Source: Macrostomum lignano
Lineage: Eukaryota
Length of the DNA stretch: 64,000 bases
Assembly (NCBI GenBank): GCA_002269645.1
Contig: NIVC01003277.1
Location: 43,718 to 107,717 of the forward strand
Direction: 5' to 3'
Below are positions 1,701-61,639 of the stretch, one piece after another. The stretch's first letter is position 1, and each line of letters opens with the position of its first letter. The position numbers and the translations under genes were made by a program. The notes below the pieces were generated by a model. The model was not told the DNA's origin, did not search any database, and saw only the letters and a program-made list of their open reading frames with translations.

Positions 1701-2189
1701 AAAATATCGGAGGTGTTCAAAAATAAGATATTTTGTGCACCGTGAAACCTTTCAGAGCTGTCAGAGCACATACCCAGGTAATTATTGACAGAGAAACTTG
1801 AAAATGAAGAAGAGACGGGTTGAGTTTTTTCAAATTTGCTTTTAACTGTAAAGGAATATTTTTCTCTTTATAGGTAATTTTGTTTTTTAGAACCCACCGG
1901 GTGCGCCGATGAAACATCTGCAAGCAAATCACCTGGGCAATCAATTTTTGTCGAGGTTGCCGCGATGAGCAGGCGGGGACTGGGGCGGGGGGAGGGGCAG
2001 CAGAATCGATGAGCACACAGGCAGCAATTTTCGCCTCAACGAAGCGGGATAAATGGAGAAAAAAAGCAAAATCACCATCATCTTTATGCACCTTTGAAAA
2101 GCGGAGCAGCTGATGATTCTTAGCAGCCTGTAAGAGCGAATTTTCGTTGCATTTCTTGGAAAGCTAGCGTGTTACAGATCACACAAAAC

Positions 2190-2334: not shown

Positions 2335-4333
2335 GTCACCGACGTGAATGACAACGCGCCGCAGATTGTGGTGAATCGCGACTCTCTCACCGTCCGCGAG
2401 AACAGCCAGCCGATTTCCACCGTCGACTACATCAGCGTCAAGGACCGCGACGTCGGCAACAGGTTCATCCACTGCGATCTTGACGGCTTCAACAGACAGA
2501 CGGACGCGTTCAGCCTGACCCGGATGTCTGGCTCTGACGCGGTGTCGGGGTCCGGCAGCCAGGTGCTGCTGCTGCTGCAGGCTATCCGCAGTCTGGACCG
2601 CGAGCAGCAGGCGGCGCACGCCCTGTCGCTCACCTGCTCTGACTCTGACGGCGTCGCCAGCACCGAGAATTTCACCGTCAGCGTTGGCGACGTCAACGAC
2701 TCGCCGCCGGTGTTCCCCAGACCGGAGCTGGTGGCCCGGCTGCTGCCGCCGCTGCGGGAGAACTCGCCACCCGGCACCGTGATCGGCAGGCTGGCAGCCA
2801 CCGACGCTGACGAGCCGCAGAACGCCAGGACGGTGTACAGCGTGGCCGGGAACTGCCAGCACGACATCGGCATCGGAGAGCTCAATGCTACGGTCTATGC
2901 AAAGGTTCGTGGGAGACTAAGAAGAGCCTCCTTAGTCTCTTCGGGATTTTGTCCCTGATCTGCCTGTACCTTGTGTCCTTGAGCTGCCTGTAGCTTGTCT
3001 CCTTGAGCTGCCTGTAGCTTGTCTCCTTGAGCTGCCTGTAGCTTGTGTCCTTGAGGTGCCTGTAGCTTTTGTCCTTGAGCTGCCTGTAGCTTGTGTCCTT
3101 GAGCTGCCTGTAGCTTGTGTCCTTGAGCTGTCTGTAGCTTGTGTCCCTGATCTGCCTCTAGCTTGTGTCCCTGAGCTGCCTGTTGTTGTCTGCAGCTTGT
3201 GTCTACTGTCTGTCCCCACTGCATCTCCTTGAGCTGCCTCTAGTTTTGGATCTCTAACTGTTAGGCAGCTCCCGAATTTCCTTAGGTTACGTTCGACCGC
3301 GAGACCAATGCCTCCATCCGCTGCGAGCTCCGGGCCACGGACGCCGAAAATCCAGCCCTGAAGTCCCACGTGGAGGTGGTGATTGTCATTGCCGACGAGA
3401 ATGACAATGCGCCTACGTTTCCTGGAAACTACACATTCCGGGTGAACGAAAGTCGAACGAAAGGGCACTTGATCGGCCGTGTCGAGGCCAAGGACCTTGA
3501 TGAAGGCGACAACGGCCGGCTGGTGTACACCCTGCGCTCCGGACACCCTGTGGGCGGCCGGCCGCACCATCGCGTCGGTTTTAGCGTCTCGCCCGACGGT
3601 CGCATCTTCTTAGCCGAAAGCATCCTGGACAGGGAGCGACAGGCGGCGCACATCCTGCAGGTGGAGGCGCAGGACTTCGGGCGGCCGCGCCAGACCAGCG
3701 TAGTCTGGGTTCGAATCGTTGTGCTCGACGAGAACGACAACGCGCCGCGGTTCGTGTTCCCCGGCGCCGGTAGCGACGGCGACACCTCTTTAAATGTCAG
3801 CATCAGCGACCGGCCGGGTGACACCGTCGCCAAGCTGACCGCGGTGGACGACGACGAGGGCGCCAACGGAGTGGTGACATTCTTTGTTGACGCTAGCTCC
3901 GATGCCATGCCGCAGTGCGAGGCAGGCCTGTTCCGATTGGATCCCGAGCAGGGTCACGTGACTCTGAGTGGGCCAATCAAGCGGGCCTGGCTGGGCACGG
4001 AGTGTCTGCTGGCGCTGGAGGCCAGGGATGGCGGCGGTAAAGCTTCCAAGCAGCGGCTGCGCATTCGGTTCGTCAGCGACCTGCGCCACAGACTGGACGG
4101 CGGCAACGGAGGCTCCGGCGATGCCAACAACTGGAGAGGCAAGGACGGCCCTCCAGAGATGATCATCGTCACGGTGTGCGTCCTGCTGGCCTTCCTGGTG
4201 CTGCTGTGCCTGGTGCTGCTGGCAGCCTACTTTTGCTACTACATGCAGCCGGCCCGCGCCGCCAGGAGCGCTTCGGCGCGGGTCCCAAATGGCGCCAATG
4301 GGCAAAGAAAAGCAGCTCACACTACGGACAATG
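2335..4333 (+). CDS. Protocadherin, 5'-partial: exons 2335-2904 and 3286-4333 encode the last cadherin repeats, the TM helix and the start of the cytoplasmic tail
   Basis: Cadherin Ca-binding motifs DVNDNAP, LDREQQ, DVNDSPP, ATDADE, FDRE, DENDNAP (x2), AKDLDEGDNG, LDRERQ and AVDDDEGANG; TM IIVTVCVLLAFLVLLCLVLLAAYFCYY; phase-0 intron GT2905..AG3285 joins K|VTFDRE in frame. Confidence 0.93.
2955..3245. repeat. 21-bp tandem repeat (TCCTTGAGCTGCCTGTAGCTTG-like) filling most of a protocadherin intron
   Basis: About 13 copies between donor 2905 and acceptor 3285. Confidence 0.9.
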
Positions 4334-4721
4334 GTTCGATTCCTCATTGATTTGATGTTCCTTCTTGCTGTGGCACTTGTACATGTATTAACGCTCACGA
4401 GGGCCCCAGGGCACAGAGAGTGTACATGCCAGAAGATTAGACCACCAAATCTTTGACAGCACTGAAAGCACCACTAGATGGCTCTCTGTACCTCCGGTCC
4501 ACCTCCCAGCTTCTCAATCATTGGACATGCGGATGAATGACGCAGTTGCTTGCGCAGCATCAGAGCCACGGTTAGAAAGTCATTTATCCCAGTTGTCTTT
4601 AACTCCAGCACAAATATTTCTCCTATCGGCGATGCGAAACCTTCCTGTGTCCTTATTGCTGTTTATGGACCAAAGGATGCATCATCAATGGCAGGGGTTG
4701 GTTTTTAGAAACAGAAATTAG

Positions 4722-6440
<1,719 letters not shown>

Positions 6441-9400
6441 GCTCCGAGTTTTCAGTAACCGAGGCAGTGTACATGTATTCAGTTTAAACATTGTCACTAA
6501 ATGACGACTTGTATTGGATTCTGACTAAAAGACTTAAAAGCATTTCTTCGGCACTAATTCGGGTTACCGATCCACAGACGCAGTAGAAAGCACAGATGCA
6601 CCATGGCACCGATACAGTAGGCTTAGCGATATACCAATAGAGAAGAAGGGCAGGTCATACGAATATACAGCCAACGTAAGGTCATTGGGGTAGAAAATAA
6701 TAGTCTGACTTCTGGTTCTACTAAAATGCAAATGACATTCGCCAACCTCGAGCACTGTTAGCCTGCAGCAGTAAATGAGGGTTTGCTGGGTAGAGAACTT
6801 GGGGTTAGGACCGGAGAGACAGACCAGAAAATCGATAACTTTCATTCAACCCCACGCACGGCTAGCCTGCAGCAATTAAATGGGATAGCGCGCGGGGGTA
6901 GAAAACAAGAGGTGGGGAAGGCAGTGGGACAGACCAGAAAATCGATAACGTTCACCAAACCACACGCAAGGCTGTCCTGCGGCTAGAAGAGTTAGAAAGT
7001 TACGAAACAAACCAGTTTACTGATAAGGGGTTTACTTCTACTTTAAAAAGCATTATAGATTTAGTTGGCTGGTTAGTAGTAAGTATTGAATTGCTTCTCA
7101 CTCGGATGTTTTAGCGTAGTGCGCTTTGGCATAACTTTTTCGTGCACATGGAAATTGTTTTTCTTTTCTGTTGAAATTGTTCGCAATGCACCATTGCTTT
7201 TTGCTGTATCAATACGTTTGTATCCAACCTTATCTAAAATATGGTAGATTTTAATAAAGATAAAGTGATGACTGCCAAGTGCAATTTTCGAGTTGAACAG
7301 TCTTCGATATTTCTTCAGCTTTTACTGAGGAACTTTCATTTTTTGAAAAATGCATCTTTCATAGGCCGCTTTTTGTCCTAGAATCAGACCATTACGGATC
7401 TGGATAAATAGGAATTCCAGATGTATCAGACGACAATTTCCTGCCTTAACTAAACCGTTTGCTCCTATTTCATGCATCAGACTAAAATTTTATAATTTCA
7501 AGAAAACGATATTTGATGTCAGAAAAGTCAAAGCACGACGCATTATAGTCAGAAACTCGTATAGTCAGAAATGCTGCGAACGGTGATGTTCGGACGAAAA
7601 CAAAACGAAAACGACTTCGTTGGAGTCTGTCTTCTACAGATTTAGTCGAGAATTAATTTCCGATCAATAGAATTCACACATTAGTTTTTTTACTCATCTG
7701 CAACTCCAAAGCTGAGACGAGAGATCATTGCTAATTGATGTGTTGTTTCATTTTGCAGCGATAATGATCGAGTCACCAATAAAGTTTGCACGGGTCTAGG
7801 AGTGCAGAGTCCTTCAGATTGAGCACAGTGAGAGGACTGGAACACGATTATGGCAGACCCTGGTCTCCAATCTGAGCTCTGAGCCGCAGCTGCAGAGCTG
7901 AGCTACTCAAAAAACAGCCAACCTTCAAGTCGCCCTTGTGTATATATTGATTGGATAGTGTGCGCCAGTGTGTGTTTTTTCGGCAATGACTTGCACAGGC
8001 TGCAGCGTGTGGGAGGGGCAATTCCCCAGCGATGGGGACGCAAAATAGTTGAGTAGCTTCTCCTCCTTGGGGCAGAGCTTTCCGCCAGCAGGCGGCCTCT
8101 CATTCCTGTCGAAGCAGCTTCCCGCTGTCAGTGTGGAAACTGCCGGACTGGCTGCTGTCGAGTGGAACTCATTAGAATGAGCTGGTCGGGTGCGAGACTG
8201 TTGAGTCTGTTTGGCGTGAGGGACTAGCTAGGAGGGGGATAATTTTCCCAGTAAGAAGGCGCAGCTGCTTCTTTCCCAACAGCTGGGTAGTGGAGTGGGG
8301 TGGAGGTATCGATGCAGCGGGTCAGTGTACTTGCCTTGGCTAGCTGGATACAGACACTGCCTAGGCTTCACATTGTGGGAAGAAAAACGGGGACTCGCTG
8401 AGTAATTGCGGGGCTGACCTGTGCATCACGCACTAAACAGTGGGAAATAGCGATTCAATAATCTGTAAGGAAAAGCGAAAGACAAAGTGCCGGTCAAAGT
8501 GCGTCTGTGGCTCAAATTTCGACGTTGCTTTAGTCGGGGCTAAGTGGAACAGGGGAAGTTAAAAAATTCAGAAGTCAATCCGATTCGATAAATGCCAATG
8601 GAGTGAGGGTTTTCAACACAGGCAGCAGGCATCGAGATTAATCACAGCTATTTCATCGAATTTCCATTTTTAAGACGACTGACTCCATGGAAATAGAATT
8701 TGAGGAAGCGTCTTTCTTGCCACCTTTTTAAAGAAATTTCAGCTTGCAGGGTCAGCCTTCGCACAGCCTTGGTTCTCCCAAGCATGTGATGCTGCTGTAC
8801 TTCTGTCCTGAAAAATTCAACCGAAGAACAACAATTAGAAAGCGGAGATGCCTGGGAGACAAGCCGATTCCGTCGTTACTTTGCAGTATCTACGAAGTCA
8901 AATCCCGTGTTTTTTCGAAAAATCCAGTTTAACAAATATATTGGTCCGAATAAACGAGGCTGTGTATTTTTAAAACATTTACTCGTATAGGTTCCAGGGA
9001 TATACATTGCAGGCTATGCAGCACAACGTCAATGGCATGGGTAGCGTAGCCGTACTGCTAACAGACCGAACACAATATTAGCACAACATCGCGGTAACCA
9101 GATCGCAGAGTGGCATTCATCATAAGCGGGTTTAAAAGCTAGGAAAATCCGAACAAGCTCACAATGCAGGGGGAATGAGTCTCAATGCGGCAGCTCTTAT
9201 TTGTTTACCCTATGTCTGAAAAGCCAGTGCAGACAAACAGTGACTGGTTTTGTTATAACTGCAACAGAAACCTGTGAAAAAGCACAGGTGAAATCGCTAT
9301 TGTTTTCTATTCATTTGCGACTTCGCGATCAATTCATATGAGTGCTCTGTTTTTTTTCACGACAGTCAGCACTCAATGAAGTCACTGGAATTTTGTATTT

Positions 9401-9652
9401 AAAAATGAATATTAAAATCACTGCGACTCGCACGGTCATACAGGTGACATCTTCTTTGGGTAATTAATTTTGGAAATCATTTGCTTTTCTATCAGTTTTC
9501 CAATTTCCTTTATTGAATTCGCAATTCCCAAACGCCTGCGCTTCCAAAAATAAAGCATGCACAGTATCTCAAAGCGAAGCCAGACGGATGTGATGCAGAG
9601 CTGGGCTCAAAGCGCAGTTGCAGCTCAGCCAGACTCCGCAGCGACTCCCCGC

Positions 9653-12600
9653 TCACTTCCTGGCGCCGGACGCGGCCGGAGCCGTCAGACGGTGCCACCT
9701 TGCCGGGGCGCTCTTGGACTTGAGCATGTTCCACCAGTGCTGGTACTCCTGGCCGCTGGTGTCGGGGCCCAGGTACACCCGGCCGACCTCCGTGCTGCTT
9801 AGTACGCCTTCGTGGCACACGGAGATCTCCAGGCAGCCGGTGCGCAGGTCCTCCTCGGCCACCCCGTTGAACACGAGCGCCTCTTCCCACACAGGGTTGC
9901 CTGGCGTCTTGCAGCTGCTGGTCTTCTTCTTCTTTTGCTTCCGGCCTCCCTGTGTGCTCAGGGTGACGCGTACGGAGGCGTCTGAGCGGCGACGGGGGTG
10001 GGGATTGACAGGACGAGTTCAGTGCTGCTACGCAGTTTTTGAGCTAGAAGATCACTAATAAACCTAGTCGTGTTTGTCCCAGAATCGAATTTCAGCTCCC
10101 ACACATCCTGACTGAAGTCTTTGGTTGCTCATATTTGCTCTGTTCATCAAAAACGAACTCAGGTTCAGATCAGCTCATCCTTCCTGTCTTGCCACCCACT
10201 TGCCGCTTGCTATCAGGCTCTGCCTAATTCTGCCTCAAACTGGTGCATCAAATTCTATAATGTCCTTTTCTGCTGCGTCGTGTTTCATCCCTATCCGATT
10301 TCATCTAATAGATTGCCTTCTATTATTGGCGTACTTTGCCTCAGCACAGGTTTTGTGCAGCAAGACGAAGCTGTAGAGTTTTACCGATGCAAAATAGAGG
10401 ATTCCTATAATCAAAGGCATATTCAACTGTCGAGCTAAAAGGGTCAAATTAGGACTATTGCTAGTCAGATTCAGCTATATTAGTTCTTTTGCCTTCTTCC
10501 TACGAGTTTTATGGAATCATAATTTAGGCTTTAATGGCCCAGCCTTTTATTCGGATTGCAGAAGCCACTGTGGGAGCTGCTCAAAATTAAGCCAAGAGCT
10601 CACCACTAATTGGCTTGTCTTTGTTGATGTCGCGCAGGTTGCGTGCCTTTATGATTGACACGCCAAGGCGCTTCGCAGCGGACAAGAAGGACAGCGAAAA
10701 CATCAGGTCACCGATTTTATGCTCCTGAAATAGTGGGCGATTGCAAGATGGAAATGATTTTGTGACGGGACGGAACGCCTGAACAGGTATCCTCACCGGG
10801 TCTGGATCTTTCTCAAGCGAAGTCAGTCCCTTCCACAGGGTGGTCTGAACCTCAGCGCCGGCAGCGGCCGAGTCCGCATCCAGCACATCAGTTAGCGGTA
10901 GACGGACCTGACCCAGACAGTCGTCAAGAGAACACGGGTCATAGTCAAACACGGTAATCTCCAAAACGCTCCAGTGAATGTCCTGCTGAGCGAGTTCGAA
11001 TATGAAAGCCTCCTCAAACTCGGGGCGCAGCGTCTTCTTGTGAACCTGGAGACGAGTGAATGGCGCGATGCGATAGCAGGCTTTAAAGGAGCATCGATCT
11101 AGTAATTTAGTTTGCTTTCCTTGTTCAGAAACTGGGACAGTAATTATCAAACGCGAGCTGCTGCCATCTGAGAGCCTGGCTTCTTGAGCAGGCGATCTAG
11201 CCTCATTGCTTTGCATCTCTGAAGCACGATAATTTAATAAACGGGCCGACAGATGTTTGCGCTTCTCGTCTCCCCCATTGCCCTTCAAATTAGCGGGGCA
11301 GAGAGGGGGCCTGTGGATCTTCACCCTCCGTCTTTGCAATAATCCATGCCCTTGAAATTGCAGGCCCTTTTGCTGCCTTGCTCGATTCTTTGGCTTCTGT
11401 CCCGCTGTCGCTTTTCTGTTAGATCTCAAGCCGGTTCGGAGAGGAAAATTATTTTGGCATTGCTTTCTGCGACGCCTCTTTCCTTAGCTACCAGCACTTC
11501 ATCGACAAATTCCAGCTTTTCGGCTCACATCTCTCTGGCAGTTTTTTATTCCGAAAAAATAGTCTGCCTTGTTGCCTTTGACCAACAGCCCATTAGGCCA
11601 GGCAAGCTGATTGAGCGCATTGGGTGCTGGCGTCTTGCCAGCTTCAAAGAGGTTGCCTTGGGGAGGAGAAAAGAAAATTCCTGAAGAAAAATTAATCCTC
11701 TTGGTCGCACTGGTGGAGAATTCTATACGAGCTACAAAGGGAAAACGTCGACGCTAAATTCTATTGAAATAACTCACTAAGCTCCTTCCATAGAAATGGG
11801 TGGATTTCCGAGCTCTCCGAGCAGCCAAAGGCAATTTCTGCCATAGACAGCAACCATAGACAGCAGCCATAGACAGCAGTCATAGACAGCAGCCCAGGGA
11901 CTACTCAATTCTCGGGACGGGAAACGGCCAAATCATGCAGAAAAAAGATGGAGGCCGATTTTCTCTGTTCTCTGCTGGTCTTATGTTTTATCGCAAGAGC
12001 TTCAGCTTTTCACTATGTACACAAAATTTATCCCTCTTCAACTTCCTGTAGCCTGTTTCTACTCAAATAATTTCGGATAAATGCTAGGAGACATTTTATA
12101 CAGTACCCCTTTAATACACAAACTCGATGCTTGATAAGCCAAGTGCATCTGTTGTAGAAGTCTATGGGAAACACTGAAGCAAGAAGTGAAAGCTTGTATT
12201 ATACGAGAAGTTATTCAACATAAGATATAAGATTAACAAAACTGTTGTATATAGTCAGTACATGTATACCAAGATTTGGAGAACGATCGCGCTAGAATAC
12301 ACACTATTGTGCACTAGAATTATTCAACAACACCAAATGCATAAATACAAGAAACACAACATTCACAACAAGCATATAAAGAACAATAAACACGATAAGA
12401 GCAAAAGGCAAGAGAACCACAAGCAAGTGCAAAACGCACATGAACCAGAACAAACAAAGTAAGCATAACAAAGTATCCCAATAGTAGTAAGCAAATATAA
12501 GCAATGCGACAAATCGAATTCGTAATCCAGTAGTCTCAGTCGGTATCTATCGCGCTTATAAACGAGATGAACTGCGTAGCTTTGTGATTTTACGATCACT

Positions 12601-15600
12601 TGCGTCTGGTGTTTGTTCTGCAGTTTTGCAGTTTCGCACAAGTCCTTTGAAAAAGCAGTTTGATAGGCGACGAGTCACCGAAGTGGTATGAATGTCCTTG
12701 TCTGGAAAGAAATATTCGGCGATAGCATTGAATATCTGTTGCACACGGGTTGCACAGCTTGGTGAATATGATGTGAAGCTAGCATAACAAAGGCGCGAGA
12801 ATTGGAAAAGCCATTCTGGTGGATGCGCTAGCTTTCCACGGGAAACAAGCTCCGTAAATTCGCATGGTTCATTTCGTGCTGCTTCTGCGTCAGCGGGAAT
12901 TCCTTCCTTTGCTGCAACGTAGCCTAGGTAGTTAAAAGCAAAAAGATAAATGAAAGTAGATATATATACGAACATTATTATACTCGTGCAAGAATACAAA
13001 ATTGCTTGAAGAAGCAATTTGAAACTTACCTGAAATGTAATATAGGGCAGCATTCTCATGCGATGTCAAATTCTCCGCAGAAATGCAGCAACTGTCGACT
13101 GTCCCCAATTCCTCATCTGATAGTTGACTGTCGCAGCAGTGGCTCTGTTGGTGACTGAAGTCGGACAATTCAAGCGATGTAAAGAGCTTCATTCGTCTCA
13201 GTCGGGCGCTAAGAAAAACTTGTTCGACTGAAATAAAATAGTTGCCTCCACTCATTTGGCGATAGACTCCGAATTCACCTTCTAAAGGATCAGTGTTGAA
13301 TTCTGATAGCAGAACATACTGCATAGCACCGGTTTCCAGCAGTTGGTGACACTTTTCTACCACACCGAACAGACTGTTACATAATGCGTTTTTGGTCTCG
13401 GTCGTAAGGCATTGATGTCGACTTCGTCCTCTACCACCGCCACGTTCAGACACAGCCTGTGCCAAGGCACTTAAGAATACTAAACGTTCGTCCGAAATCG
13501 AGGAAATTGGCTTTCGATCAGGATCGTTCAGTCGTATGTGCAAATAAGGGTTGCGGCAATTAACTGTTTTCCAAAACTTAACAATAGATTCTACAAACTT
13601 TGCAGTATCGTGGAATCCATCGCACGCAAGAGCAGCTACTACCTTGTCATCGAATACCTGCAGAGCAAGAGAAACACAGGTTTTCTGAATTCCATTTGGG
13701 TAGCATGCCCGTGAGTGAGATTTGTTCGTCTGACAACGTGGTTTTGTTCAGCCTTAAAGACATGAATGATGTGACTCCATTTCGCCGAAATGACTCTGTC
13801 GCATCCCGGAATTCGAAGTGCTATAGTCCCCTTCTGTTCAGTCTGCCAGTTGTTTCTTATCGATTTCAACAAGTGGACCATGTCATTGATCATAAAAAAT
13901 TGACTAGTCTGATTGACGTCTCGTCCAATCCAATCCTTGTTTTGCTGCTGATCTCTGAACAAATTAAAACATTTTCTGTTAGTAGGATGATTGTCGCAAA
14001 CCAAAGCGAAAACAGTACCACCATGCTTGTTGACCAACTCAATGCTTTGACTTAGTTGCTGTTTGAGAAATTCGGCTGTGAGTAGAAAAATTGGTATAAG
14101 GCGCAATATGAATGGTTTTCCACCCATTAGCGGCTTCAACATTATCGCCAGAATTGTCCGAGCAATTTTCGCCGAGTCGTCCTCCGCTTGTCCAAACAGA
14201 TGTTTACATCTAAATCTGACAGATGGCTGCACGTACATCTCGTCAAATAGTAAAACGCAGTTCAGCTGGGTGCCGCGAAGTGCAGAAAAAACTGTTCGAA
14301 TAGTTTCATCAGAATCGGCTGCAGTTCCAATCTCTCCAAGACCGGCCAAATTTGTACGGAGAGTTCTTTGATGTGGCAGTGGCAACAGAGTGCGAAGTTG
14401 AGAGTAAGCCGAACTGCTGATTAAATAGATAAGAGCTGACTGCCTTAGTGTGGCAATGTCGTACCGACGACTCACTGGACTTGTAGAAATTAGCTGTAGT
14501 TGTGAAATTAAAAACTGTATCGATGGATTCGTGATGACAGTATTTTCTAATTCCAACACTTGAAGAAATGACGACGACATCGCTTTCAACTCATGCTGAA
14601 CAGACAGTTGAAAATTCATGCATCGAACGATAATGGCATCGAGTTGTGAAAAATACTTCAATGTAGGCTGGAATCCTAGCAGATCTCTCAGCGGAACCGG
14701 CGAATGATAGTGAAAAGCACGAGTTGCAAAGTTGGACGAAATAAAAATCTTGATCTTTAGTTCTCCGCTCGAATCCAAACCAAACAAATAAACTTCTTCA
14801 TTGCATAACGATACAAACAGCGAATGTTGAGCAACGATGTCTGATGATTTGAGTGCAGAAACGAGCTCGCTCCAGCCTGGCAAACTGTCGATTTTACGAA
14901 ATTCTTCCAACTCGTCCGGTTTAAAATTTCTTTCGGCAGACAAAACGCGACGGACTTTTGGTTTTCTCGCTAATGCTAAAATTATGGACGTAAGCAATGC
15001 GATGGAGAATCGTTTGTATGTTGGTAGCACAATACGTGTACAGTTTATGTATTGACAAATTCTCACATTTCGATTGAACAAAACATGATAGGGGAATTGC
15101 AACGTCAAAGACGGACGGCGGGTCGACAGGTCGCTCATATCTGCTGCGTTTTATCATTGGCACTGATATTGGCCAGTGCTTCTCGCATACTGCCATATGC
15201 GGTGTTGGATCCTGTAGAATTATGAGCGGTGTGCTACAGAAACAAAACCTCGCAAAACTTGTCCTTCCGAACAAGAGAGACAATGCACTGTCTCTCCAAC
15301 TTGCCCAGCAGAGAGTAAAATCACGAATTTCATTATTACCAGTTTACTGCTCGACTCACCTTGATGAAATTTGGTAGAGCCAGTCGCCATTTTTCCTTCT
15401 CTATAGGATCGTTTGGGAAAGTAAAGACTTTAACAGAAGTTTTTTCGTTCAAATAGTTCGACTTGCATGATTGCACACAGCATTTCCTTGGCATGAATGC
15501 GAAAAAACGCAAAGCAAAATTAGGAAGAGCAAATGAAAATTTCTGTCGTGTCGTGGCTACCCAGCCAAGTTAACTCACAGAGGAGTCCAAAGTTGACTAT

Positions 15601-18600
15601 TTATTTGCATTCTATGGTATCAGTCCTTACCTTTTAGGCCATCACATAATACAAGCTTTCACTTCTTGCTTCAGTGTTTCCCATAGACTTCTACAACAGA
15701 TGCACTTGGCTTATCAAGCATCGAGTTTGTGTATTAAAGGGGTACTGTATAAAATGTCTCCTAGCATTTATCCGAAATTATTTGAGTAGAAACAGGCTAC
15801 AGGAAGTTGAAGAGGGATAAATTTTGTGTACATAGTGAAAAGCTGAAGCTCTTGCGATAAAACATAAGACCAGCAGAGAACAGAGAAAATCGGCCTCCAT
15901 CTTTTTTCTGCATGATTTGGCCGTTTCCCGTCCCGAGAATTGAGTAGTCCCTGCAGCAGCCATATACAGCAGTCATAGACAACAGCCATATACAGCAACC
16001 ATAGACAGCAGCCATAGACAGCAGCCATAGACAGCAGCCATAGACAGCAGCCATAGACAGCAGCCATAGACAATCTCTGCCATAGACAGCAGCCATAGAT
16101 AATCTCTGCCATAGACAGCAGCCATAGACAGCAGCCATAGACAACAGTCATAGACAACAGCCATATACAGCAACCATAGACAGCAGCCATAGACAGCAGC
16201 CATAGACAGCAGCCATAGACAGCAGCCATAGACAATCTCTGCCATAGACAGCAGCCATAGATAATCTCTGCCATAGACAACAGCCATAGATAATCTCTGC
16301 CATAGACAGCAGCCATATACAGCAACCATAGACAGCAGCCATAGACAGCAGCCATAGACAGTAGCCATAGACAGCAGCCATAGACAATCTCTGCCATAGA
16401 CAGCAGCCATATACAGCAGCCATAGACAACAGTCATAGACAACAGCCATATACAGCAACCATAGACAGCAGCCATAGACAGCAGTCATAGACAGCAGCCA
16501 TAGACAATCTCTGCCATAGACAGCAGCCATAGATAATCTCTGCCATAGACAGCAGCCATAGACAGCAGCCATAGACAACAGTCATAGACAACAGCCATAT
16601 ACAGCAACCATAGACAGCAGCCATAGACAGCAGCCATAGACAGCAGCCATAGACAGCAGCCATAGACAATCTCTGCCATAGATAGCAGCCATAGATAATC
16701 TCTGCCATAGACAACAGCCATAGATAATCTCTGCCATAGACAGCAGCCATAGACAACAGCCATAGACAATCTCTGCCATAGACAGCAGCCATAGATAATC
16801 TCTGCCATAGACAGCAGCCATAGACAATCTCTGCCATAGACAACAGCCATAGATAATCTCTGCCATAGACAGCAGCCATAGACAATCTCTGCCATAGGCC
16901 GCAGCCATAGACAATCTCTGCCATAGACAGCAGCCATAGACAATCTCTGCCATAGACAGCAGCCATAGACAACAGCCATAGACAATCTCTGCCATAGACA
17001 GCAGCCATAGACAACAGCCATAGACAATCTCTGCCATAGACAGCAGCCATAGACAATCTCTGCCATAGACAGCAGCCATAGACAATCTCTGCCATAGACA
17101 GCAGCCATAGAAATCTCTGCCATAGACAGCAGCCATAGACAATCTCTGCCATAGACAGCAGCCATAGACAATCTCTGCCATAGGCCGCAGCCGTTGGAAC
17201 TCTGCTGTAGAAAAATGCTTGATCCTACACTCTAAGCCTGAATCTGGGGTCAAAATCCTCCTGCTCTTTGAAAAAAAGCAAGATAGAATATTTTCAAGTC
17301 TAATAGCCTGCCTCCCGAACTTTAATTTCTTGACCGAACTTTAGGAGAAAAAAGTTGCATATACTGTACGAGCTATTTATTGTAAAACTGTTAAATTACA
17401 GGGTTTATAGGCAAAGTTGATCACTCATGCCTAGCGCACAAGTAATAGAGTTAAGTCTGCATGCATCATCCCAATTTTGATTAGTACCTTGTGCAGGATA
17501 CACGTGAGCTATTTGCTTCAATATCGCTAAACTCGTTAACGCAGTCGTATATTAGATAAAAATATCCATAGCCACTTCGTCTGCAGAGCTCTTTCATTCA
17601 TCCCACCGCTGCCCACCAGATACATCCCGTTAGCCAAATGAATTATCCCCCCCTTACCTTTGTAGTGCTCTGAGTCTTGCGGTTGGGCAGAAGGGCCACG
17701 CGGCAGTAGGGGTTGACCGATCCGGTGGAGCTGTCCTTTGGCTGCAGGTCGATGGTCTGAATGATGCGCACAGTCAGGATGCCGGTGTCCTCCCGGTAGC
17801 TGAGAGAGAAATTCAGCTGGCCGAGGTTCTCCTCCTGGATGCTCTGGATGGCGCTGGTCTGATTGTACTGCAATTTGGAGGGCGATTCTCCGGAAATGGC
17901 TGATGACTGAAAGGTACTTCTGCTCAACATCCGGGTGCCGATTTGTCTCCCTCAGTTTTATTGTGTGCGCCACCATGCCCTGGCTCTACTGCAGCCATTC
18001 AACATTGAACTGTGTTTGATTCTTTCTGAAGTCAATGCAACCTTTGTTCTTCCTGAATGGCATGCGGTTTAGATATTCTGTTTACGGATTTTCCCTGTGA
18101 ATACGAGGGTTGTGTCAAAGGTTTCTGGCAAGGGAATGCAGCCCCATGGCGCAAGACTAAAATGAAGCCCATGATTTTCAGCCCTCGCAAACAACTCTTC
18201 CGGAACTTCTGACACAATCATTCTTTTCCCAGCAGCTTTTAATGCACCACACGGTACTTCATCTCATGACTTTTCAGGTAAATCGTGCTTCGAAATAATT
18301 ATGATATAATTCCCGAACAAATTCTAAGCTGGTACTGCTCACTCAGGCTCACTTTAAGGCTAAAGGGCGCAAAAAGTCTTCCAAAAAGGGTGCTTTTTCC
18401 AGCCTCCCCCACCTGAGCCGTGCGCCTCCTTTTTCTCTTCTTAGCTTCTCCTGTGCTCGAGACCTGCAGCTCAGTGTGGCGCACCGGCCCACCTTTTCTC
18501 CCTTTCGTTTCCTCCCGGCTCATGTTTGCTTTTGCTGCAAAGAAAACTTTCTTTCGAGGATCATGCAGTTGAAAGCAAAGGCGCTCTCTGAAATTCTATC

Positions 18601-20765
18601 TCCAGCTCTGACGGACTCTTTGCTTCAATCTGATAAGGGGCAGCCGTTAACGAATGAGGGATGAAAAACTGCAATGCTGTCTTCGCTAAGACAGATGCTT
18701 TGGAGATGCTCAAAGTAAATGAATGCCGCTTTGAGCAATTTTATGAGCAGTGTTCTGAGTATTGATTGCGGACTGGATTGTGAGCACTGATATCTGTTCA
18801 TCCTATGCATTGCTATGAGAACTGCCGGTGAGCACTATGAGCACAGTCTGTGAGTACAATGAGCACTGCCGGTGAGCACTATGAGCACAGTCTGTGAGTA
18901 CAATGAGCACTGCCCCGTGATCACTATGAGCACTGCCCTGTGAGCATCATCATGAGCCCGGCATCAAAGCCAAACTCACCACCTTGCTGTACAGATCCGC
19001 ATTGATCTTCGAAGCGTCGATGGCGTCCTGCATGCTGGCTCTGCGTCGCTCCCTCCGATAGTCGCAACTGCCGCTCACCGCAATGCAGCCTCCTCCGGCG
19101 CATCCTCCGATCGCCAGTTTTGATGCCGAAGAGGAGGCCGCTTCCTCGTTGGTTGCCATGGAAACGGGAGCAATCGCCTCGCCCCGCGACCAACCAGAGA
19201 GGACAGTGAGCGGTGGCCTGGCGGGTCGGGGAGGGACAGGCATGTCAGATCAGAGCACAGCTGTCCTTGCAAACAGCCAATGGGACCGCACCGCCTGCTT
19301 GTGTGAGTCCGAAGGCCGGCAAAGGAAACGGAGATTTGCTGCTCAAAAAGCATCTGTGCTATGCGGGACAGGCAGTGCAGAGGGAAAATGCAACAGACTA
19401 AAGCTGTTTTGGAATTTATGACTCCCTTCTCGTTGTGAATTCGGGTCTTCTGCTCTTGCTTAATTTAATTCCTTTTTTCTATCATTTCCTGGCCGAAATC
19501 CCGGCGTTCTCTACGCTCGTACGAGGCGATTTCTCCCCCAGCTGCTGCTTTTATTTCTCAGAGCGAACGCAGAGGGATTGCCAGAATTTTTAGCTGAGCG
19601 TTATTTTCCTTGGATGATGTTGGAAAATGTCGAAGAATTTGCAAACGTCGATAAAAGACACTCTCCCTCGCCAACCCGAGTAACACTTCGGGTCTCTTAT
19701 CTCCTAACTGCGATTTGATGTTTGTCAGAGTTTGTCTACTAATTAGTAGAAAGTATAGAGTGTAGCGCTAAAAGCTTGCACGACGGGCAAAGAAATATCG
19801 CCGTGTTTGTGAGCAGGGAGTTGTAGCCCAATGGAGGGGGTTGTAGCCCAATGGAGGGGGTTGTAGCCCAATGGAGGGGGTTGTAGCCCAATGGAGGGGG
19901 TTGTAGCCCAGTGGAGGGGGGTTGTAGCCCAGTGGAGGGGGTTGTAGCCCAGTGGAGGGGGGTTGTAGCCCAGTGGAGGGGGTTGTACCTCAGTGGAGGG
20001 TTGTAGCCCAGTGGAGGGGGTTGTAGCCCAGTGGAGGGGGTTGTACCTCAGTGGAGGGTTGTAGCCCAGTGGAGGGGGTTGTAGCCAGTGGAGGGGGGTT
20101 GTAGCCCAGTGGAGGGGGTTGTACCTCAGTGGAGGGTTGTAGCCCAGTGGAGGGGGTTGTAGCTCAGTGGAGGGGGGTTGTAGCCCAGTGGAGGGGGTTG
20201 TAGCCCAGTGGAGGGGGTTGTAGCTCAGTGGAGGGGGTTGTAGCCAGTGGAAGGGGATTGTAGACCAGTGGTTAAAGCATCGGACTTACGACTTGAAAAT
20301 CGGGGGTTCGATTCCCGATCCCACTCGGAACAATTTGTGTCCTTGACCGAGACGCTTAACTCTGCATTGCTTCAGTTCTCCCAGCTGTAAAATGGATGCC
20401 AGAATTAGCTGGAGTAATTGAGGGTGTGTGTGGGCGACCCGGTTGCACATCTGGCCCAAACGGGGCAGGATTAATCAATCAAGAAACCGCTCCTGGCCGT
20501 AGCAGCTGGGTTTGACTTCACTTTCGTTAGCCAAGAGCTGACGATGCTGTGACATTTCGCAGTGCATTCAATTCCACCTCTTTGCCGGACAATGACACCG
20601 TGGGAAGTCAAACTCACCTGTGAGCTCCATACCGGACAAGGCGGACGCTGCCAGGCTCATGGCTCTTTGCCTGGCAACTGGCGGCCCGATCGGACTGTCT
20701 CCGTCCCTGTCTGTTTGAGGGGTCTGCGGCGACAGCGGTAGCGGGTTGGCTGCGGCAGCCGGATG
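9653..20765 (-). CDS. Synaptotagmin-like tandem C2 protein; exons (minus) ~20765-20618, 19217-18980, 17906-17658, 11045-10797, 10724-10604, 9981-9653
   Basis: C2A: LGQLNFSLSY..LTVRII..DLQPKD..VNPYCRVALLP..TK|VHKKTLRPEFEEAFIF..LEITVFDYD..DDCLGQVRLPL. C2B: IGDLMFSLSFL..RLGVSIIKARNL..KKKKTS..NPVWEEALVF..LEISV..VGRVYLG..ARWHRL. GT/AG junctions give consistent phases (2,0,0,0,1); the 5' edge of the 20765 exon is uncertain. Confidence 0.88.
11895..15953 (-). mobile_element. Complete P-superfamily (THAP transposase) DNA transposon, 4,059 bp, with 308-bp TIRs and an 8-bp TSD CAGCAGCC
   Basis: 11895-12202 is the reverse complement of 15646-15953 (ends CAGGGACTACTCAATTCTCGGG...); CAGCAGCC at 11887-11894 and 15954-15961; internal spliced transposase. 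Confidence 0.96.
12556..15494 (-). CDS. THAP-domain P-type transposase; exons 15494-15360, 15211-15067, 14975-13030, 12923-12556; about 864 aa if a single 1-nt deletion near 13710 is corrected
   Basis: THAP: MPRKCCVQSC..FTFP..KW..|..VCEKHW..PSVF. Catalytic core: LLFDEMYV, VCDNHPTN, DMVHLLKSIRNN, NTDPLEGEFGVYRQMSGG. C-terminal LYYIS|GYVA. Three GT-AG introns; frame switch at THG/ACYPN. Confidence 0.92.
15954..17190. repeat. Minisatellite of mixed 13-bp (CAGCAGCCATAGA) and 16-bp (CAATCTCTGCCATAGA) units; a few units remain left of the transposon (about 11840-11894)
   Basis: Seen directly; the array is split by the P element. Confidence 0.95.
18810..18945. repeat. Short tandem duplication (about 44 bp, GAGCACTGCCGGTGAGCACTATGAGCACAGTCTGTGAGTACAAT) beside the 18979 donor
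   Basis: Two full copies plus partial copies. Confidence 0.8.
19816..20270 (+). repeat. About 20-bp minisatellite GGAGGGGGTTGTAGCCCAGT derived from the 5' head of the adjacent SINE
   Basis: About 22 units; the last unit runs directly into the SINE tRNA-like region. Confidence 0.9.
20254..20480 (+). mobile_element. tRNA-derived (Val-like) SINE with a CORE-like central domain
   Basis: A-box-like TAGACCAGTGGT; CTTACGA loop; B-box GGTTCGATTCC (20305-20315); CCTTGACCGAGACGCTTAACTCTGCATTGCTTCAGTTCTCCCAGCTGTAAAATGG resembles the MIR/CORE consensus; related copy at 41597. Confidence 0.8.
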
Positions 20766-20834: not shown

Positions 20835-22212
20835 AATTAGCTAAGAGTAGCAACGGGGAGCCATCGATTAGCAATGGGGAGCCATAGATTAGCAACAGGG
20901 AGCCAAAGATTAGCAACAGGGAGCCATAGATTAGCAATGAGGAGAGCCATAGATTAGCAACGGGGAGCCATAGATTAGCAACGGGGAGCCATAGATTAGC
21001 AATGAGGAGAGCCATAGATTAGCAACGGGGGTAGCCATAGATTAGCAACGGGGAGCCATAGATTAGCAACGGGGTAGCCATAGATTAGCAACGGGGAGCC
21101 ATAGATTAGCAACGGGGAGCCATAGATTAGCAACGGGGAGCCATAGATTAGCAACGGGGAGCCATAGATTAGCAACGGGGAGCCATAGATTAGCAACGGG
21201 GGAGCCATAGATTAGCAACGGGGAGCCATAGATTAGCAATGGGGAGCCATAGATTAGCAACAGGGAGCCATAGATTAGCAATGAGGAGAGCCATAGATTA
21301 GCATGGATGTAGAGCCATAGATTAGCAATGAGGAGAGCCATAGATTAGCATGGCTGTAGAGCCATAGATTAGCAATGAGGAGAGCCATAGATTAGCAACA
21401 GGAGCCATAGATTAGCAACAGGAGCCATAGATTAGTAACGGGGGAGCCATAGATTAGCAACAGGAGCCATAGATTAGCAATGGGGAGCCATAGATTAGCA
21501 ACAGGGAGCCATAGATTAGCAACAGGGAGCCATAGATTAGCAACAGGGAGCCATAGATTAGCAACAGGGAGCCATAGATTAGCAATGAGGAGAGCCATAG
21601 ATTAGCATGGCTGTAGAGCCATAGATTAGCAATGAGGAGAGCCATAGATTAGCATGGCTGTAGAGCCATAGATTAGCAATGAGGAGAGCCATAGATTAGC
21701 AACAGGAGCCATAGATTAGCAACGGGGTAGCCATAGATTAGCAACAGGAGCCATAGATTAGCAACGGGGGAGCCATAGATTAGTAACGGGAGCCATAGAT
21801 TAGCAACGGGAGCCATAGATTATCAATGAGGAGAGCCATAGATTAGCAACAGGAGCCATAGATTAGCAACGGGGAAGCCATAGATTAGCAACCGGGGAGC
21901 CATAGATTAGCAACCGGGGAGCCATAGATTAGTAACAGGAGCCATAGATTAGCAATGAGGAGAGCCATAGATTAGCAACAGGAGCCATAGATTAGCAACA
22001 GGAGCCATAGATTAGCAACGGGGAAGCCATAGATTAGCAACCGGGGAGCCATAGATTAGCAACCGGGGAGCCATAGATTAGTAACAGGAGCCATAGATTA
22101 GCAATGAGGAGAGCCATAGATTAGCAACAGGAGCCATAGATTAGCAACAGGAGCCATAGATTAGCAACGGGGAGCCATAGATTAGCAACGGGGGTAGCCA
22201 TAGATTAGCAAG
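20835..22212. repeat. About 21-bp minisatellite GAGCCATAGATTAGCAACGGG in a C2-gene intron
   Basis: About 60 variant units. Confidence 0.95.
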
Positions 22213-25469: not shown

Positions 25470-26520
25470 ACACATTTTGTGTTATGGGTGCCATTTTGTG
25501 TGTCATGGGTGCCATTTTGTGTGTCATGGGTGCCATTTTGTGTGATTGGTTGCCATTTTGTGTCATGGGTGCCATTTTGGGTGTCATGGCAGCCATTTTG
25601 TGTGATTGGTTGCCATTTTGTGTCATGGTTGCTATTTTGTGTGTCACGGGTGCCATTTTGTGTGTCATGGCTGCCATTTTGGCTGTCATGGCTGCTATTT
25701 TTTGGGTGTGCTGGGTGCCATTTTGTGTGTCATGGGTGCCATTTTGTGTGTCATGGGTGCCATTTTGTGTCATGGGTGCCATTTTGTGTGTCATGGGTGC
25801 CATTTTGGGTGTCATGGGTGCTATTTTCTGTTATTGGTTGCCATTTTGTGTCATGGGTGCCATTTTGTGTGTCATGGGTGCCATTTTGTGTGTCACGGGT
25901 GCCATTTTGAGTGCCATGGGTGCCATTTTGTGTGATTGGTTGCCATTTTGTGTGTCGTGGGTGCCATTTTGTGTGTCATGGGTGCCATTTTGGGTGTCAT
26001 GGGTGCCATTTTGTGTGATTGGTTGCCATTTTGTGTCATGGGTGCCATTTTGGGTGTCATGGGTGCCATTTTGTGTGATTGGTTGCCATTTTGTGTCATG
26101 GGTGCCATTTTGGGTGTCATGGTTGCTATTTTTTGAGTGTGATGGGTGCCATTTTGTGTGTCATGGCTGCCATTTTTTGGGTGTCATGGGTGCCATTTTG
26201 TGTGCCATTGGTGCCATTTTGTGTGTCATGGGTGCAATTTGGGTGTCATGGGTGCCATTTTGTGTGTCATGGGTGCCATTTTGTGTGTCATGGCTGCCAT
26301 TTTGTGTCACGGGTGCCATTTTGTGTGTCACGGGTGCCATTTTGTGTGTCATGGGTGCCATTTTGGGTGTCATGGCTGCCATTTTTTGGGTGTGCTGGGT
26401 GCCATTTTGTGTGCCATTGGTGCCATTTTGGGTGTCATGGCTGCCATTTTTTGGGTGTGCTGGGTGCCATTTTGTGTGCCATTGGTGCCATTTTGGGTGT
26501 CATGAGTGCCATTTTTGGAG
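25470..26520. repeat. 19-21-bp minisatellite GGGTGCCATTTTGTGTGTCAT
   Basis: About 50 variant units. Confidence 0.95.
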
Positions 26521-61594: not shown

Positions 61595-61639
61595 CCGGTT
61601 CTGATTCCATCGCATTCTCATTATCAGTGGAATTCACTT

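What the first reader, a model, noticed from the sequence alone, without database searches (positions are those of the whole stretch)
11895..15953. Full-length long-TIR P-superfamily transposon with an intron-containing THAP transposase
Seen: 308-bp TIRs that look identical by eye, an exact 8-bp TSD, and a four-exon transposase with a THAP zinc finger split by an intron plus all catalytic motifs (FDEM, CDN, DxxHLLKxxRNN, DPLE). The ORF track misses it as a unit. Known: the canonical Drosophila P element has 31-bp TIRs, while long TIRs characterise the Galileo branch of the P superfamily. Inference: this is a young, possibly still mobile, Galileo-like or new long-TIR P lineage in a non-insect host, and a candidate transgenesis tool.
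Basis: partly seen in the sequence, partly recalled or inferred. Interest (0 to 1): 0.8.

Follow-up and report, generated by a model that had tools for sequence, protein, structure and literature searches.

The report
Young P-type transposon in a flatworm
This is a real, recently inserted cut-and-paste DNA transposon of the P-element superfamily, sitting in an intron of a Macrostomum lignano (flatworm) gene. As assembled, its transposase gene has a one-base frameshift, so this copy cannot be called active or intact.

Summary
The repeats are real. The 308-nt terminal inverted repeats (11895-12202 and 15646-15953) are 100% complementary and are flanked by CAGCAGCC on both sides. The minus strand carries a transposase gene with a THAP domain, a P-type RNase H domain and a GTP-binding-type insertion domain. 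It has three clean GT-AG introns, and the first one splits the THAP finger.

It needs one extra base at a GGG run (13708-13710). Unrepaired, the spliced mRNA stops after 538 aa, before the catalytic glutamate. All homologues read straight through this site, so it is a frameshift or an assembly error, not an intron.

The host is Macrostomum lignano. The element lies in an intron of a C2-domain gene, and the public model of that gene (A0A1I8FWY0) wrongly absorbed part of the transposase.

The protein belongs to a very large, mostly unnamed clade of P-like transposases. That clade separates from canonical insect P elements (96% bootstrap, about 17-20% identity). Close relatives have TIRs of 73 to about 250 nt, 7-8 bp target duplications and the same CA(C/G)GGACTACT termini.

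"Galileo-like" is unsupported, and mobility is unproven. This is a new member of a known kind, of moderate interest.

The parts
11887..11894 (.). Left copy of the 8-bp target-site duplication, CAGCAGCC
   Evidence: Removing the element plus one copy restores the 13-bp satellite register. Weak on its own.
11895..12202 (+). Terminal inverted repeat at the 3' end of the transposase gene, 308 nt. Terminus is CAGGGACTACTC...
   Evidence: 100% complementary to 15646-15953. No internal repeats of 9 nt or longer. The first ~65 nt align with the termini of related elements L003 and L004.
12203..12555 (-). 3' untranslated region between the stop codon and the TIR. Includes a low-complexity A/C-rich stretch (+ strand, about 12300-12480).
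   Evidence: No AATAAA or ATTAAA signal was found.
12556..12923 (-). Exon 4, the C-terminal domain (GYVAAKEG...SSSRL plus stop)
   Evidence: The YISG|YV junction matches the conserved YIAGYV of relatives.
12924..13029 (-). Intron 3, 106 nt, GTAAGT...CTAG, phase 1
   Evidence: The ORF of relative P0001 ends at exactly this donor.
13030..14975 (-). Exon 3: helix-turn-helix region, the split RNase H domain (D338 at 14244-14242, D421 at 13995-13993, E659 at 13282-13280) and the GTP-binding-type insertion domain
13703..13714 (-). Frameshift site, one nucleotide missing. The best repair is GGG (13710-13708) to GGGG, giving ..NLTHGACYPNG..
   Evidence: Homologue alignments break at 13708-13714. The 18 codons here are conserved in all relatives and in Drosophila P transposase.
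13639..13641 (-). Premature stop (TAG) reached in the shifted frame. The as-assembled product is 538 aa.
14976..15066 (-). Intron 2, 91 nt, GTGAGA...TTTTAG, phase 1
   Evidence: An intron at the same protein position (about aa 94) is present in relatives L001, L003 and L005.
15067..15211 (-). Exon 2, the second half of the THAP domain (C54, H57, PPSVF)
15212..15359 (-). Intron 1, 148 nt, GTGAGT...CTACAG, phase 0. Splits the THAP zinc finger.
   Evidence: The position is shared with L001.
15360..15494 (-). Exon 1 coding part (MPRKCCVQSCKSNY...LPNFIK), the first half of the THAP domain
15495..15645 (-). Presumed 5' UTR and promoter region between the TIR and the ATG
   Evidence: Inferred from position only
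15646..15953 (-). Terminal inverted repeat at the 5' end of the gene, 308 nt
15954..15961 (.). Right copy of the 8-bp target-site duplication, CAGCAGCC
15954..17170 (.). 13-bp minisatellite (CAGCAGCCATAGA) into which the element inserted. 4.2 more units lie at 11840-11894.
9656..19159 (-). Host gene, a C2-domain (synaptotagmin-like) gene of M. lignano. Its exons map at 19159-18980, 17915-17655, 11045-10605 and 9985-9656. The element lies in the intron between 17655 and 11045, in the same orientation as the gene.
   Evidence: tblastn of UniRef A0A1I8FWY0 (P0020) against the window. C2 domain found at 10587-11429.

Best explanation
**What it is**

The 4,059-bp segment 11895-15953 is one copy of a class II (cut-and-paste) DNA transposon of the P-element superfamily in the Macrostomum lignano genome. 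It inserted recently into a 13-bp minisatellite inside an intron of a C2-domain gene, in the same orientation as that gene.

**How it most likely works (inferred by homology)**
1. The transposase is made from a four-exon gene.
2. Its N-terminal THAP zinc finger binds sites in the conserved outer ~65 bp of the TIRs. These carry the boxes CA(C/G)GGACTACT, GGACG and GGAGGCYGA.
3. The two ends are paired.
4. The split RNase H domain (D338, D421, E659) cuts the element out.
5. The 3'-OH ends, which end in G, join to a target cut with an 8-bp stagger. Repair of that stagger gives the CAGCAGCC duplication.

**State of this copy**

As assembled, one base is missing in exon 3. The gene would give only a 538-aa protein: THAP, HTH, the N-terminal half of RNase H and half of the insertion domain, without E659. 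The copy is therefore non-autonomous, but with perfect ends it could still be moved by transposase from another copy. Alternatively, the missing base is an assembly error and the copy is intact.

**Shown versus inferred**
- Shown: the anatomy, the homology, the host, the frameshift, and the conservation of ends and introns in relatives.
- Inferred: the binding sites, the chemistry, GTP use and present-day activity.
For: - **Ends:** the TIRs are 308/308 complementary. The flanking 8-mers are identical and the satellite register is restored on excision.
- **Domains:** THAP, TNP-like_RNaseH_N and TNP-like_GBD all score above Pfam cut-offs.
- **Homology to P:** the single sequence matches Drosophila P transposase 6p5a at E=6e-5, and the family profile at E=3e-30.
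- **Catalytic residues:** the D230/D303/E531 equivalents are invariant. The GTP-contact residues V401, N447 and D528 are conserved.
- **Gene integrity:** three GT-AG introns have matching phases. Introns 1 and 2 are shared with relatives. 40 of the 42 residues invariant in 18 relatives are kept.
- **Host and position:** exons of M. lignano protein A0A1I8FWY0 flank the element at 98-100% identity.
- **Relatives built the same way:**
  - L003 (M. lignano): 5.2 kb, 73-nt TIRs, 8-bp TSD TGAATAGG.
  - L004: 3.8 kb, TIRs of about 250 nt at 98-99% identity, 7-bp TSD.
  - Both share the CACGGACTACT terminus.
- **Frameshift rather than intron:** homologue alignments abut at 13708-13714, and the 18 codons are conserved in every relative.
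Against: - Only one copy is visible, and the window holds no fragments or MITE derivatives. Copy number, insertion polymorphism and transcription are untested.
- No protein more than 53% identical was found in the public protein collections, apart from the chimeric model of this same locus.
- The TSD lies in periodic DNA, so it is not independent proof.
- Two GTP-pocket residues of canonical P (F443-D444) are W-K in this whole clade, and K400 is C in this copy. GTP dependence cannot be assumed.
- Identical TIRs could also be kept identical by gene conversion between the arms rather than by youth.
Confidence: 0.88

Rival explanations
1. The copy is fully intact and autonomous. The missing base at the GGG run (13708-13710) is a consensus error of a long-read assembly, and the true gene encodes the 864-aa transposase.
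For: - The break is at a homopolymer, and adding one G recreates the clade consensus A-C-Y-P.
- The rest of the 2.6-kb coding sequence has no other defect and keeps 40 of 42 invariant residues.
- The TIRs are identical.
- The published M. lignano assembly Mlig_3_7 is PacBio CLR assembled with Canu and polished with Pilon. REAPR rated only about 64% of its bases error-free (PMC5730564).
Against: - A 3-base run is a short homopolymer.
- It is not known which assembly the window comes from.
- Frameshifted, non-autonomous copies are the commonest state of DNA transposons.
- No reads were available.
Confidence: 0.4
2. The frame change is bridged by a fourth, 53-nt intron (13737-13685, GTTGTC...TTCAG). 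This would give a five-exon gene and an 846-aa protein.
For: The length restores the frame, the intron has GT-AG ends, and the product has no stop.
Against: - It would delete 18 codons that are conserved in all relatives and align to Drosophila P transposase residues about 382-397. These include the near-invariant L513 and P520.
- The closest relative, P0001/L001, shares the other intron positions but reads through this stretch as exon.
- The donor GTTGTC is weak compared with GTGAGT, GTGAGA and GTAAGT at the three other introns.
Confidence: 0.05
3. It is a hAT-superfamily element, suggested by the 8-bp TSD and the CAGGG terminus typical of Ac/hobo-like ends.
For: The 8-bp TSD and the CAG... 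terminus are shared with hAT elements (general knowledge of hAT ends).
Against: - The Pfam scan found no hAT dimerisation domain and no BED finger, only THAP and P-type RNase H/GBD.
- The profile match is to P transposase.
Confidence: 0.01
4. It is a domesticated THAP9-like host gene rather than a mobile element, or the inverted repeats are an assembly artefact.
For: THAP9-type domesticated genes exist in many animals (PMC7776569). The genome is repeat-rich and hard to assemble (PMC5730564).
Against: - Perfect 308-nt TIRs sit right at a duplicated target site, inside another gene's intron.
- The same TIR, TSD and terminal-motif architecture occurs in independent relatives from other sources.
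- The reading frame is broken.
Confidence: 0.03

Closest known systems
Canonical P element of Drosophila (P family, P superfamily)
   Same: - Same protein plan: THAP domain, HTH, and an RNase H domain split by a GTP-binding-type insertion domain.
- Catalytic D/D/E and the contact residues V401, N447 and D528 are conserved.
- 8-bp TSD, termini starting CA.. and ending ..G, and a four-exon gene with three introns (PMC3698922, PMC7776569).
   Different: - Only about 17-20% identity. It separates from the arthropod P group with 96% bootstrap.
- TIRs are 308 nt rather than 31 nt, and there are no 11-bp sub-terminal inverted repeats.
- Pfam's RNaseH_C and Tnp_P_element_C models do not hit.
- F443-D444 is replaced by W-K.
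- The first intron lies inside the THAP domain.
Galileo (P superfamily, Drosophilidae)
   Same: A P-superfamily transposase combined with TIRs of hundreds of bp. In Galileo, several THAP-binding sites lie in the long TIRs (PMC3688188), which could also apply here.
   Different: - Galileo makes 7-bp TSDs with a GTANTAC preference. Its TIRs reach about 1.2 kb and are internally repetitive, Foldback-like (PMC4168063, PMC3573991).
- Here the TSD is 8 bp (GC-rich), the TIRs have no internal repeats, the gene has three introns and the host is a flatworm.
- Phylogenetic relatedness was not tested.
Zebrafish Pdre/THAP9 transposons and vertebrate THAP9
   Same: P-type transposase outside insects. The zebrafish elements have TIRs, sub-terminal repeats and 8-bp TSDs, with recently mobile deleted copies (PMC7776569, PMC10983969).
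   Different: Zebrafish TIRs are 13 bp. Human THAP9 has no TIRs at all.
Unnamed P-like elements from M. lignano (NIVC01000293.1, protein BOX15_Mlig018626g1) and from environmental or SRA assemblies (L001, L004, L005-L007)
   Same: - Same clade, at 34-53% identity.
- Same terminal motif CA(C/G)GGACTACT..GGACG..GGAGGCYGA.
- TSDs of 7-8 bp and TIRs of 73 to about 250 nt.
- Shared intron at about aa 94, and with L001 also the THAP intron.
   Different: - A different family at the DNA level.
- The window element has the longest TIRs seen.
- Some relatives (L002, L006/7) are intronless.

Membership tests
P superfamily of DNA transposons | N-terminal THAP (C2CH) DNA-binding domain | tested here: met
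   Pfam THAP E=3.6e-7, above the cut-off. C5, C10, C54, H57, P27, W36, P77 and F80 are invariant in the family alignment. The profile matches solved THAP domains.
P superfamily of DNA transposons | RNase H-like catalytic domain with a D, D, E triad, interrupted by the P-type (GTP-binding) insertion domain | tested here: met
   Pfam TNP-like_RNaseH_N and TNP-like_GBD. The profile matches 6p5a at E=3e-30. D338, D421 and E659 align to D230, D303 and E531. In this copy the frameshift falls inside the insertion domain.
P superfamily of DNA transposons | 7-8 bp target-site duplication | tested here: met
   8 bp CAGCAGCC, ambiguous on its own because the target is periodic. Relatives give 8 bp (L003) and 7 bp (L004, L033).
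P superfamily of DNA transposons | GTP as a required cofactor, and 17-nt staggered donor cleavage | not testable with these tools
   Sequence only: V401, N447 and D528 are kept. F443-D444 is W-K in the clade, K400 is C here, and K385 and S409 vary (residue list from PMC7776569).
Canonical P family (Drosophila-type) | Groups with insect P transposases; 31-bp TIRs with 11-bp sub-terminal inverted repeats | tested here: not met
   Separated from the arthropod P group in 96 of 100 bootstraps, at 17-20% identity. The TIRs are 308 nt.
Galileo family | Transposase groups with Galileo transposases | not tested
Galileo family | 7-bp TSD (GTANTAC), and long, internally repetitive Foldback-like TIRs | tested here: not met
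   The TSD is 8 bp, CAGCAGCC. The TIRs are long (308 nt) but have no internal repeat of 9 nt or longer. Galileo features are taken from PMC4168063 and PMC3698922.
hAT superfamily | hAT C-terminal dimerisation domain and a hAT-type RNase H domain (often with a BED finger) | tested here: not met
   Absent from the Pfam scan at E<=0.01.
Domesticated THAP9-type host gene | Single-copy gene without TIRs or TSD, with an intact ORF | tested here: not met
   Perfect TIRs and a TSD are present. The ORF is interrupted. The element lies in another gene's intron.
Autonomous (active) transposon copy | Uninterrupted transposase ORF, further copies, polymorphic insertions, transcripts | tested here: inconclusive
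   The ORF is broken by one base at a G-run, which may be an assembly error. Copy number, polymorphism and transcripts are not testable with the data on hand.

The most novel reading that the evidence does not exclude
This family is active today in laboratory M. lignano, through this copy if the missing G is an assembly error or through an intact sibling copy otherwise. It would represent a large, uncharacterised animal clade of P-type transposons with conserved CA(C/G)GGACTACT ends and an altered GTP pocket (W-K in place of F443-D444). That pocket might bind its nucleotide cofactor differently from Drosophila P transposase, or not need one.
Probability: 0.2. Interest if true: 0.55.

Novelty: new member of a known kind. 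Interest (0 to 1): 0.33.

Why it matters
**Annotation.** The public protein A0A1I8FWY0 is a chimera of a C2-domain gene and this transposase. Gene models and expression counts for that gene should be corrected.

**M. lignano biology.** M. lignano is a model for regeneration, germline and transgenesis studies. A very young DNA-transposon insertion suggests recent DNA-transposon activity, which matters for line stability and insertional polymorphism in a polyploid, repeat-rich genome.

**Transposon biology.** The element helps define a large, unnamed branch of the P superfamily: 30,295 protein clusters at E<=1e-3 and 2,683 at E<=1e-30. The branch has a shared terminal motif, variable TIR length (25-308 nt) and a variant GTP pocket. 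That makes the question of GTP dependence outside Drosophila testable.

**As a tool.** Its value is limited. It is endogenous to the one flatworm where transgenesis already works with piggyBac (PMC8717057). It could still be tried in other flatworms.

Tried and rejected
- **53-nt intron across the frame break.** Rejected because it removes 18 conserved codons and the closest relative has exon there.
- **Single-base deletions as the repair.** None restores the frame.
- **Exact look-up of the 499-aa exon-3 ORF in public assemblies.** Not on record, so no copy count.
- **Word-indexed homologue search with the family alignment.** It added nothing beyond the first search.
- **Names for the top representative hits.** None carry names.
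- **Other copies, fragments or MITEs of the element in the 64-kb window.** None found.
- **Repeated motifs inside the TIR as candidate multiple THAP sites.** Only three chance-level 8-mers.
- **Literature on P elements in flatworms or a superfamily breakdown of M. lignano DNA transposons.** Nothing specific. DNA transposons make up 3.05% of Mlig_3_7.
- **TSDs in metagenome relatives.** Most flanks show none, probably because contigs of multi-copy elements are chimeric. Only L033 gave a clean 7-bp TSD.
- **hAT, domesticated gene and assembly-artefact readings.** Rejected as described under the rival explanations.

Full report
**1. Observation**

The inverted repeats are exactly as described. 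Arms 11895-12202 and 15646-15953 are 308 nt and 100% complementary. Complementarity stops abruptly at both the outer and inner edges. The 8-mer CAGCAGCC abuts both ends.

The element sits near the left edge of a 13-bp minisatellite, CAGCAGCCATAGA. There are 4.2 units to its left and about 88 units to its right. Removing the element and one 8-mer restores the 13-bp register.

This is weaker evidence than it looks, for two reasons. In a 13-bp array, +8 is the same as -5. And 41 of about 94 units carry the exact 8-mer. The 8-bp duplication is still the best reading, because related elements in unique DNA have clean duplications: 8 bp TGAATAGG in L003, and 7 bp in L004 and L033.

**2. The gene**

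The gene is on the minus strand, and three-frame translation with splice-site phasing gives this model.

| Feature | Coordinates | Notes |
|---|---|---|
| Start codon | 15494 | ATG |
| Exon 1 | 15494-15360 | First half of THAP |
| Intron 1 | 15359-15212 | 148 nt, GTGAGT..CAG, phase 0 |
| Exon 2 | 15211-15067 | Second half of THAP |
| Intron 2 | 15066-14976 | 91 nt, GTGAGA..TAG, phase 1 |
| Exon 3 | 14975-13030 | HTH, RNase H, insertion domain |
| Intron 3 | 13029-12924 | 106 nt, GTAAGT..TAG, phase 1 |
| Exon 4 | 12923-12556 | C-terminal domain and stop |

Intron 1 falls between K45 and D46.

The reading frame of exon 3 changes between 13714 and 13703. No single-base deletion repairs it. As written, the spliced mRNA encodes 538 aa and stops at TAG 13641-13639, upstream of the catalytic glutamate.

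**3. Frameshift or intron?**

A 53-nt GT-AG interval (13737-13685) would also restore the frame and give 846 aa. It would, however, remove 18 codons (VVRRTNLTHG.CYPNGIQ) that are conserved:
- They are conserved in every homologue. P0001, for example, has VVRRTNLSHESVYPTNIQ.
- They align to residues of the Drosophila P transposase insertion domain.

tblastn alignments of three homologues abut at 13708-13714 with no protein gap. The closest relative (P0001 on genomic contig L001) shares our intron 1 and intron 2 positions, and its ORF ends at our intron 3 donor. It still reads straight through this stretch.

The most economical repair is GGG (13710-13708) to GGGG. This yields ..THGACYPNG.., which matches the clade consensus [SA]-C-[YF]-P.

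Because the site is a homopolymer, an assembly error is a live possibility. The published M. lignano assembly was built from PacBio CLR reads with Canu and polished with Pilon, and REAPR rated about 64% of its bases error-free (PMC5730564). I cannot decide between a real mutation and an error without reads.

**4. What the protein is**

- Pfam finds THAP, TNP-like_RNaseH_N and TNP-like_GBD, all above their curated cut-offs.
- Alone, the protein matches the cryo-EM chain of Drosophila P transposase (6p5a) at E=6e-5. A profile of it with 18 relatives matches at E=3e-30.
- In 19 family members, RNaseH_N hits 18, THAP 17, GBD 14 and the P-type HTH 5.
- The catalytic residues D230, D303 and E531 of the fly enzyme correspond to D338 (14244-14242), D421 (13995-13993) and E659 (13282-13280). 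They are invariant.
- Of the published GTP-contact residues (PMC7776569), V401, N447 and D528 are conserved. F443-D444 is W-K throughout this clade, K400 is C in this copy (N in P0001), and K385 and S409 vary. GTP use is therefore plausible but not assured.
- The repaired protein keeps 40 of the 42 residues that are invariant among 18 relatives. Apart from the frameshift, the gene has not decayed.

**5. Host and context**

The UniRef protein A0A1I8FWY0 of Macrostomum lignano, named "C2 domain-containing protein", maps to the minus strand of this window. Its exons lie at 19159-18980 (100% identity), 17915-17655, 11045-10605 and 9985-9656 (98%). In between, it has a block of about 165 residues identical to transposase exon 3.

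Three conclusions follow. The window is M. lignano. The element lies in a 6.6-kb intron of a synaptotagmin-like gene, in the same orientation. And the public gene model is a chimera that swallowed transposon sequence.

The window holds no other copy or fragment of the element.

**6. Relatives and classification**

The best homologues are unnamed proteins from SRA and metagenome assemblies, at 53% identity or lower. A second M. lignano family (BOX15_Mlig018626g1) is 38% identical.

An exhaustive profile search finds 30,295 clusters at E<=1e-3 and 2,683 at E<=1e-30. The protein type is very common in public data, though the sampled clusters carry no names.

I built a neighbour-joining tree with named arthropod P transposases (D. 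willistoni, D. bifasciata, Lucilia and others). The window protein pairs with P0001 in 95 of 100 bootstraps. The whole clade separates from the canonical and arthropod group in 96 of 100. Identity to D. willistoni P is 17%.

Galileo, 1360 and THAP9 sequences were not obtainable, so their relationship to this clade is untested.

**7. Ends in relatives**

| Element | Source | Size | TIR | TSD | Terminus |
|---|---|---|---|---|---|
| Window | M. lignano | 4,059 bp | 308 nt, 100% | 8 bp CAGCAGCC | CAGGGACTACTC.. |
| L003 | M. lignano | 5.2 kb (6688-11931) | imperfect, 73 nt | 8 bp TGAATAGG | CACGGACTACTTAA.. |
| L004 | 252-kb ENA contig | 3.8 kb (5223-9052) | about 250 nt, 98-99% | 7 bp CTATGCG | CACGGACTACTAT.. 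|

The first ~65 nt of all three align. They share the boxes CA(C/G)GGACTACT, GGACG, (G)CAAA and GGAGGCYGA, although the transposases are only 34-38% identical. These boxes are the natural candidates for end recognition and THAP binding, which is an inference.

L005 to L007 have TIRs of at least 79-80 nt. In 80 more distant metagenome loci, detectable TIRs are mostly 25-120 nt, with termini such as CACGGCC.. and CATGGCCTACT... TIR length therefore varies within the clade, and 308 nt is the longest seen.

The TIR here has no internal tandem or repeated motifs, unlike Galileo.

Several relatives are intronless (L002, L006/7). The close ones share intron 2, and L001 also shares the THAP intron.

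**8. Mechanism (inferred by homology with Drosophila P; PMC7776569)**

1. The THAP domain binds near the ends.
2. The two ends are paired.
3. The RNase H domain excises the element.
4. The 3' ends, which terminate in G as in P, integrate into a target cut with an 8-bp stagger.

The as-assembled 538-aa product keeps THAP and HTH but lacks E659. If it is made, it would resemble the truncated P repressor proteins. This is speculation.

**9. Age and activity**

Zero differences in 308 aligned TIR positions puts arm divergence below about 1% (95% bound of roughly 3/308). That is consistent with a recent insertion, unless the arms are homogenised by gene conversion.

Activity today is not shown. Only one copy was seen, there are no transcript or polymorphism data, and the ORF is broken as assembled.

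**10. Verdict**

This is a genuine, well-preserved P-superfamily transposon in a flatworm. It is a new member of a known kind, not demonstrably Galileo-like and not demonstrably intact. The most useful immediate outcomes are a corrected gene model for the host gene and a defined terminal motif for this P-like clade.

Noticed in passing
window 9656-19159 (minus strand): The public M. lignano protein A0A1I8FWY0 ('C2 domain-containing protein') is a chimeric gene model. Its C2-gene exons flank the element, and about 165 residues in the middle are transposase exon 3 (roughly 14470-13980).
   Followed up: partly
L003 6688-11931 (M. lignano NIVC01000293.1): A second M. lignano P-like family, 38% identical in protein. 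It has 73-nt imperfect TIRs, the 8-bp TSD TGAATAGG and the same CACGGACTACT terminus. It lies between a larger pair of 500-700-nt inverted repeats (4210-4701 and 13302-13910, 82-96% identical), so it may be nested in another element.
   Followed up: partly
L004 5770-5801: An internal palindrome, CACGGACTACTAAATGATTTAGTAGTGGCGTG, inside a related element repeats the terminal motif. It may be an internal end-like site.
   Followed up: no
alignment of the clade with Drosophila P transposase (positions F443-D444, K400): The GTP-pocket residues F443-D444 of the fly enzyme are W-K (or W-N, W-S) in the whole flatworm-type clade. K400 is C in the window copy and N in P0001. V401, N447 and D528 are kept.
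   Followed up: partly
window 1-1703, 20844-22211, 25473-26515, 30928-32819, 61617-62345, 62682-63366 and others: The window is packed with minisatellites, with periods of 13-62 bp and arrays up to 1.9 kb. This fits the reported 13% tandem-repeat content of the M. lignano genome. The 33-bp array at 30928-32819 lies inside a 962-aa ORF (30435-33323, minus strand) with no Pfam match.
   Followed up: partly
window 3370-4350 (+): An ORF with two cadherin domains (Pfam E=1e-23). It is probably an exon of a cadherin gene next to a 24-bp repeat at 2950-3183.
   Followed up: no
window 12300-12480: An A/C-rich low-complexity stretch (ACAA/CACAA-like) lies in the presumed 3' UTR of the transposase gene. 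No canonical poly(A) signal was found between the stop codon and the TIR.
   Followed up: no
window 40003-41487 (+): A 494-aa ATG-started ORF with no Pfam match.
   Followed up: no
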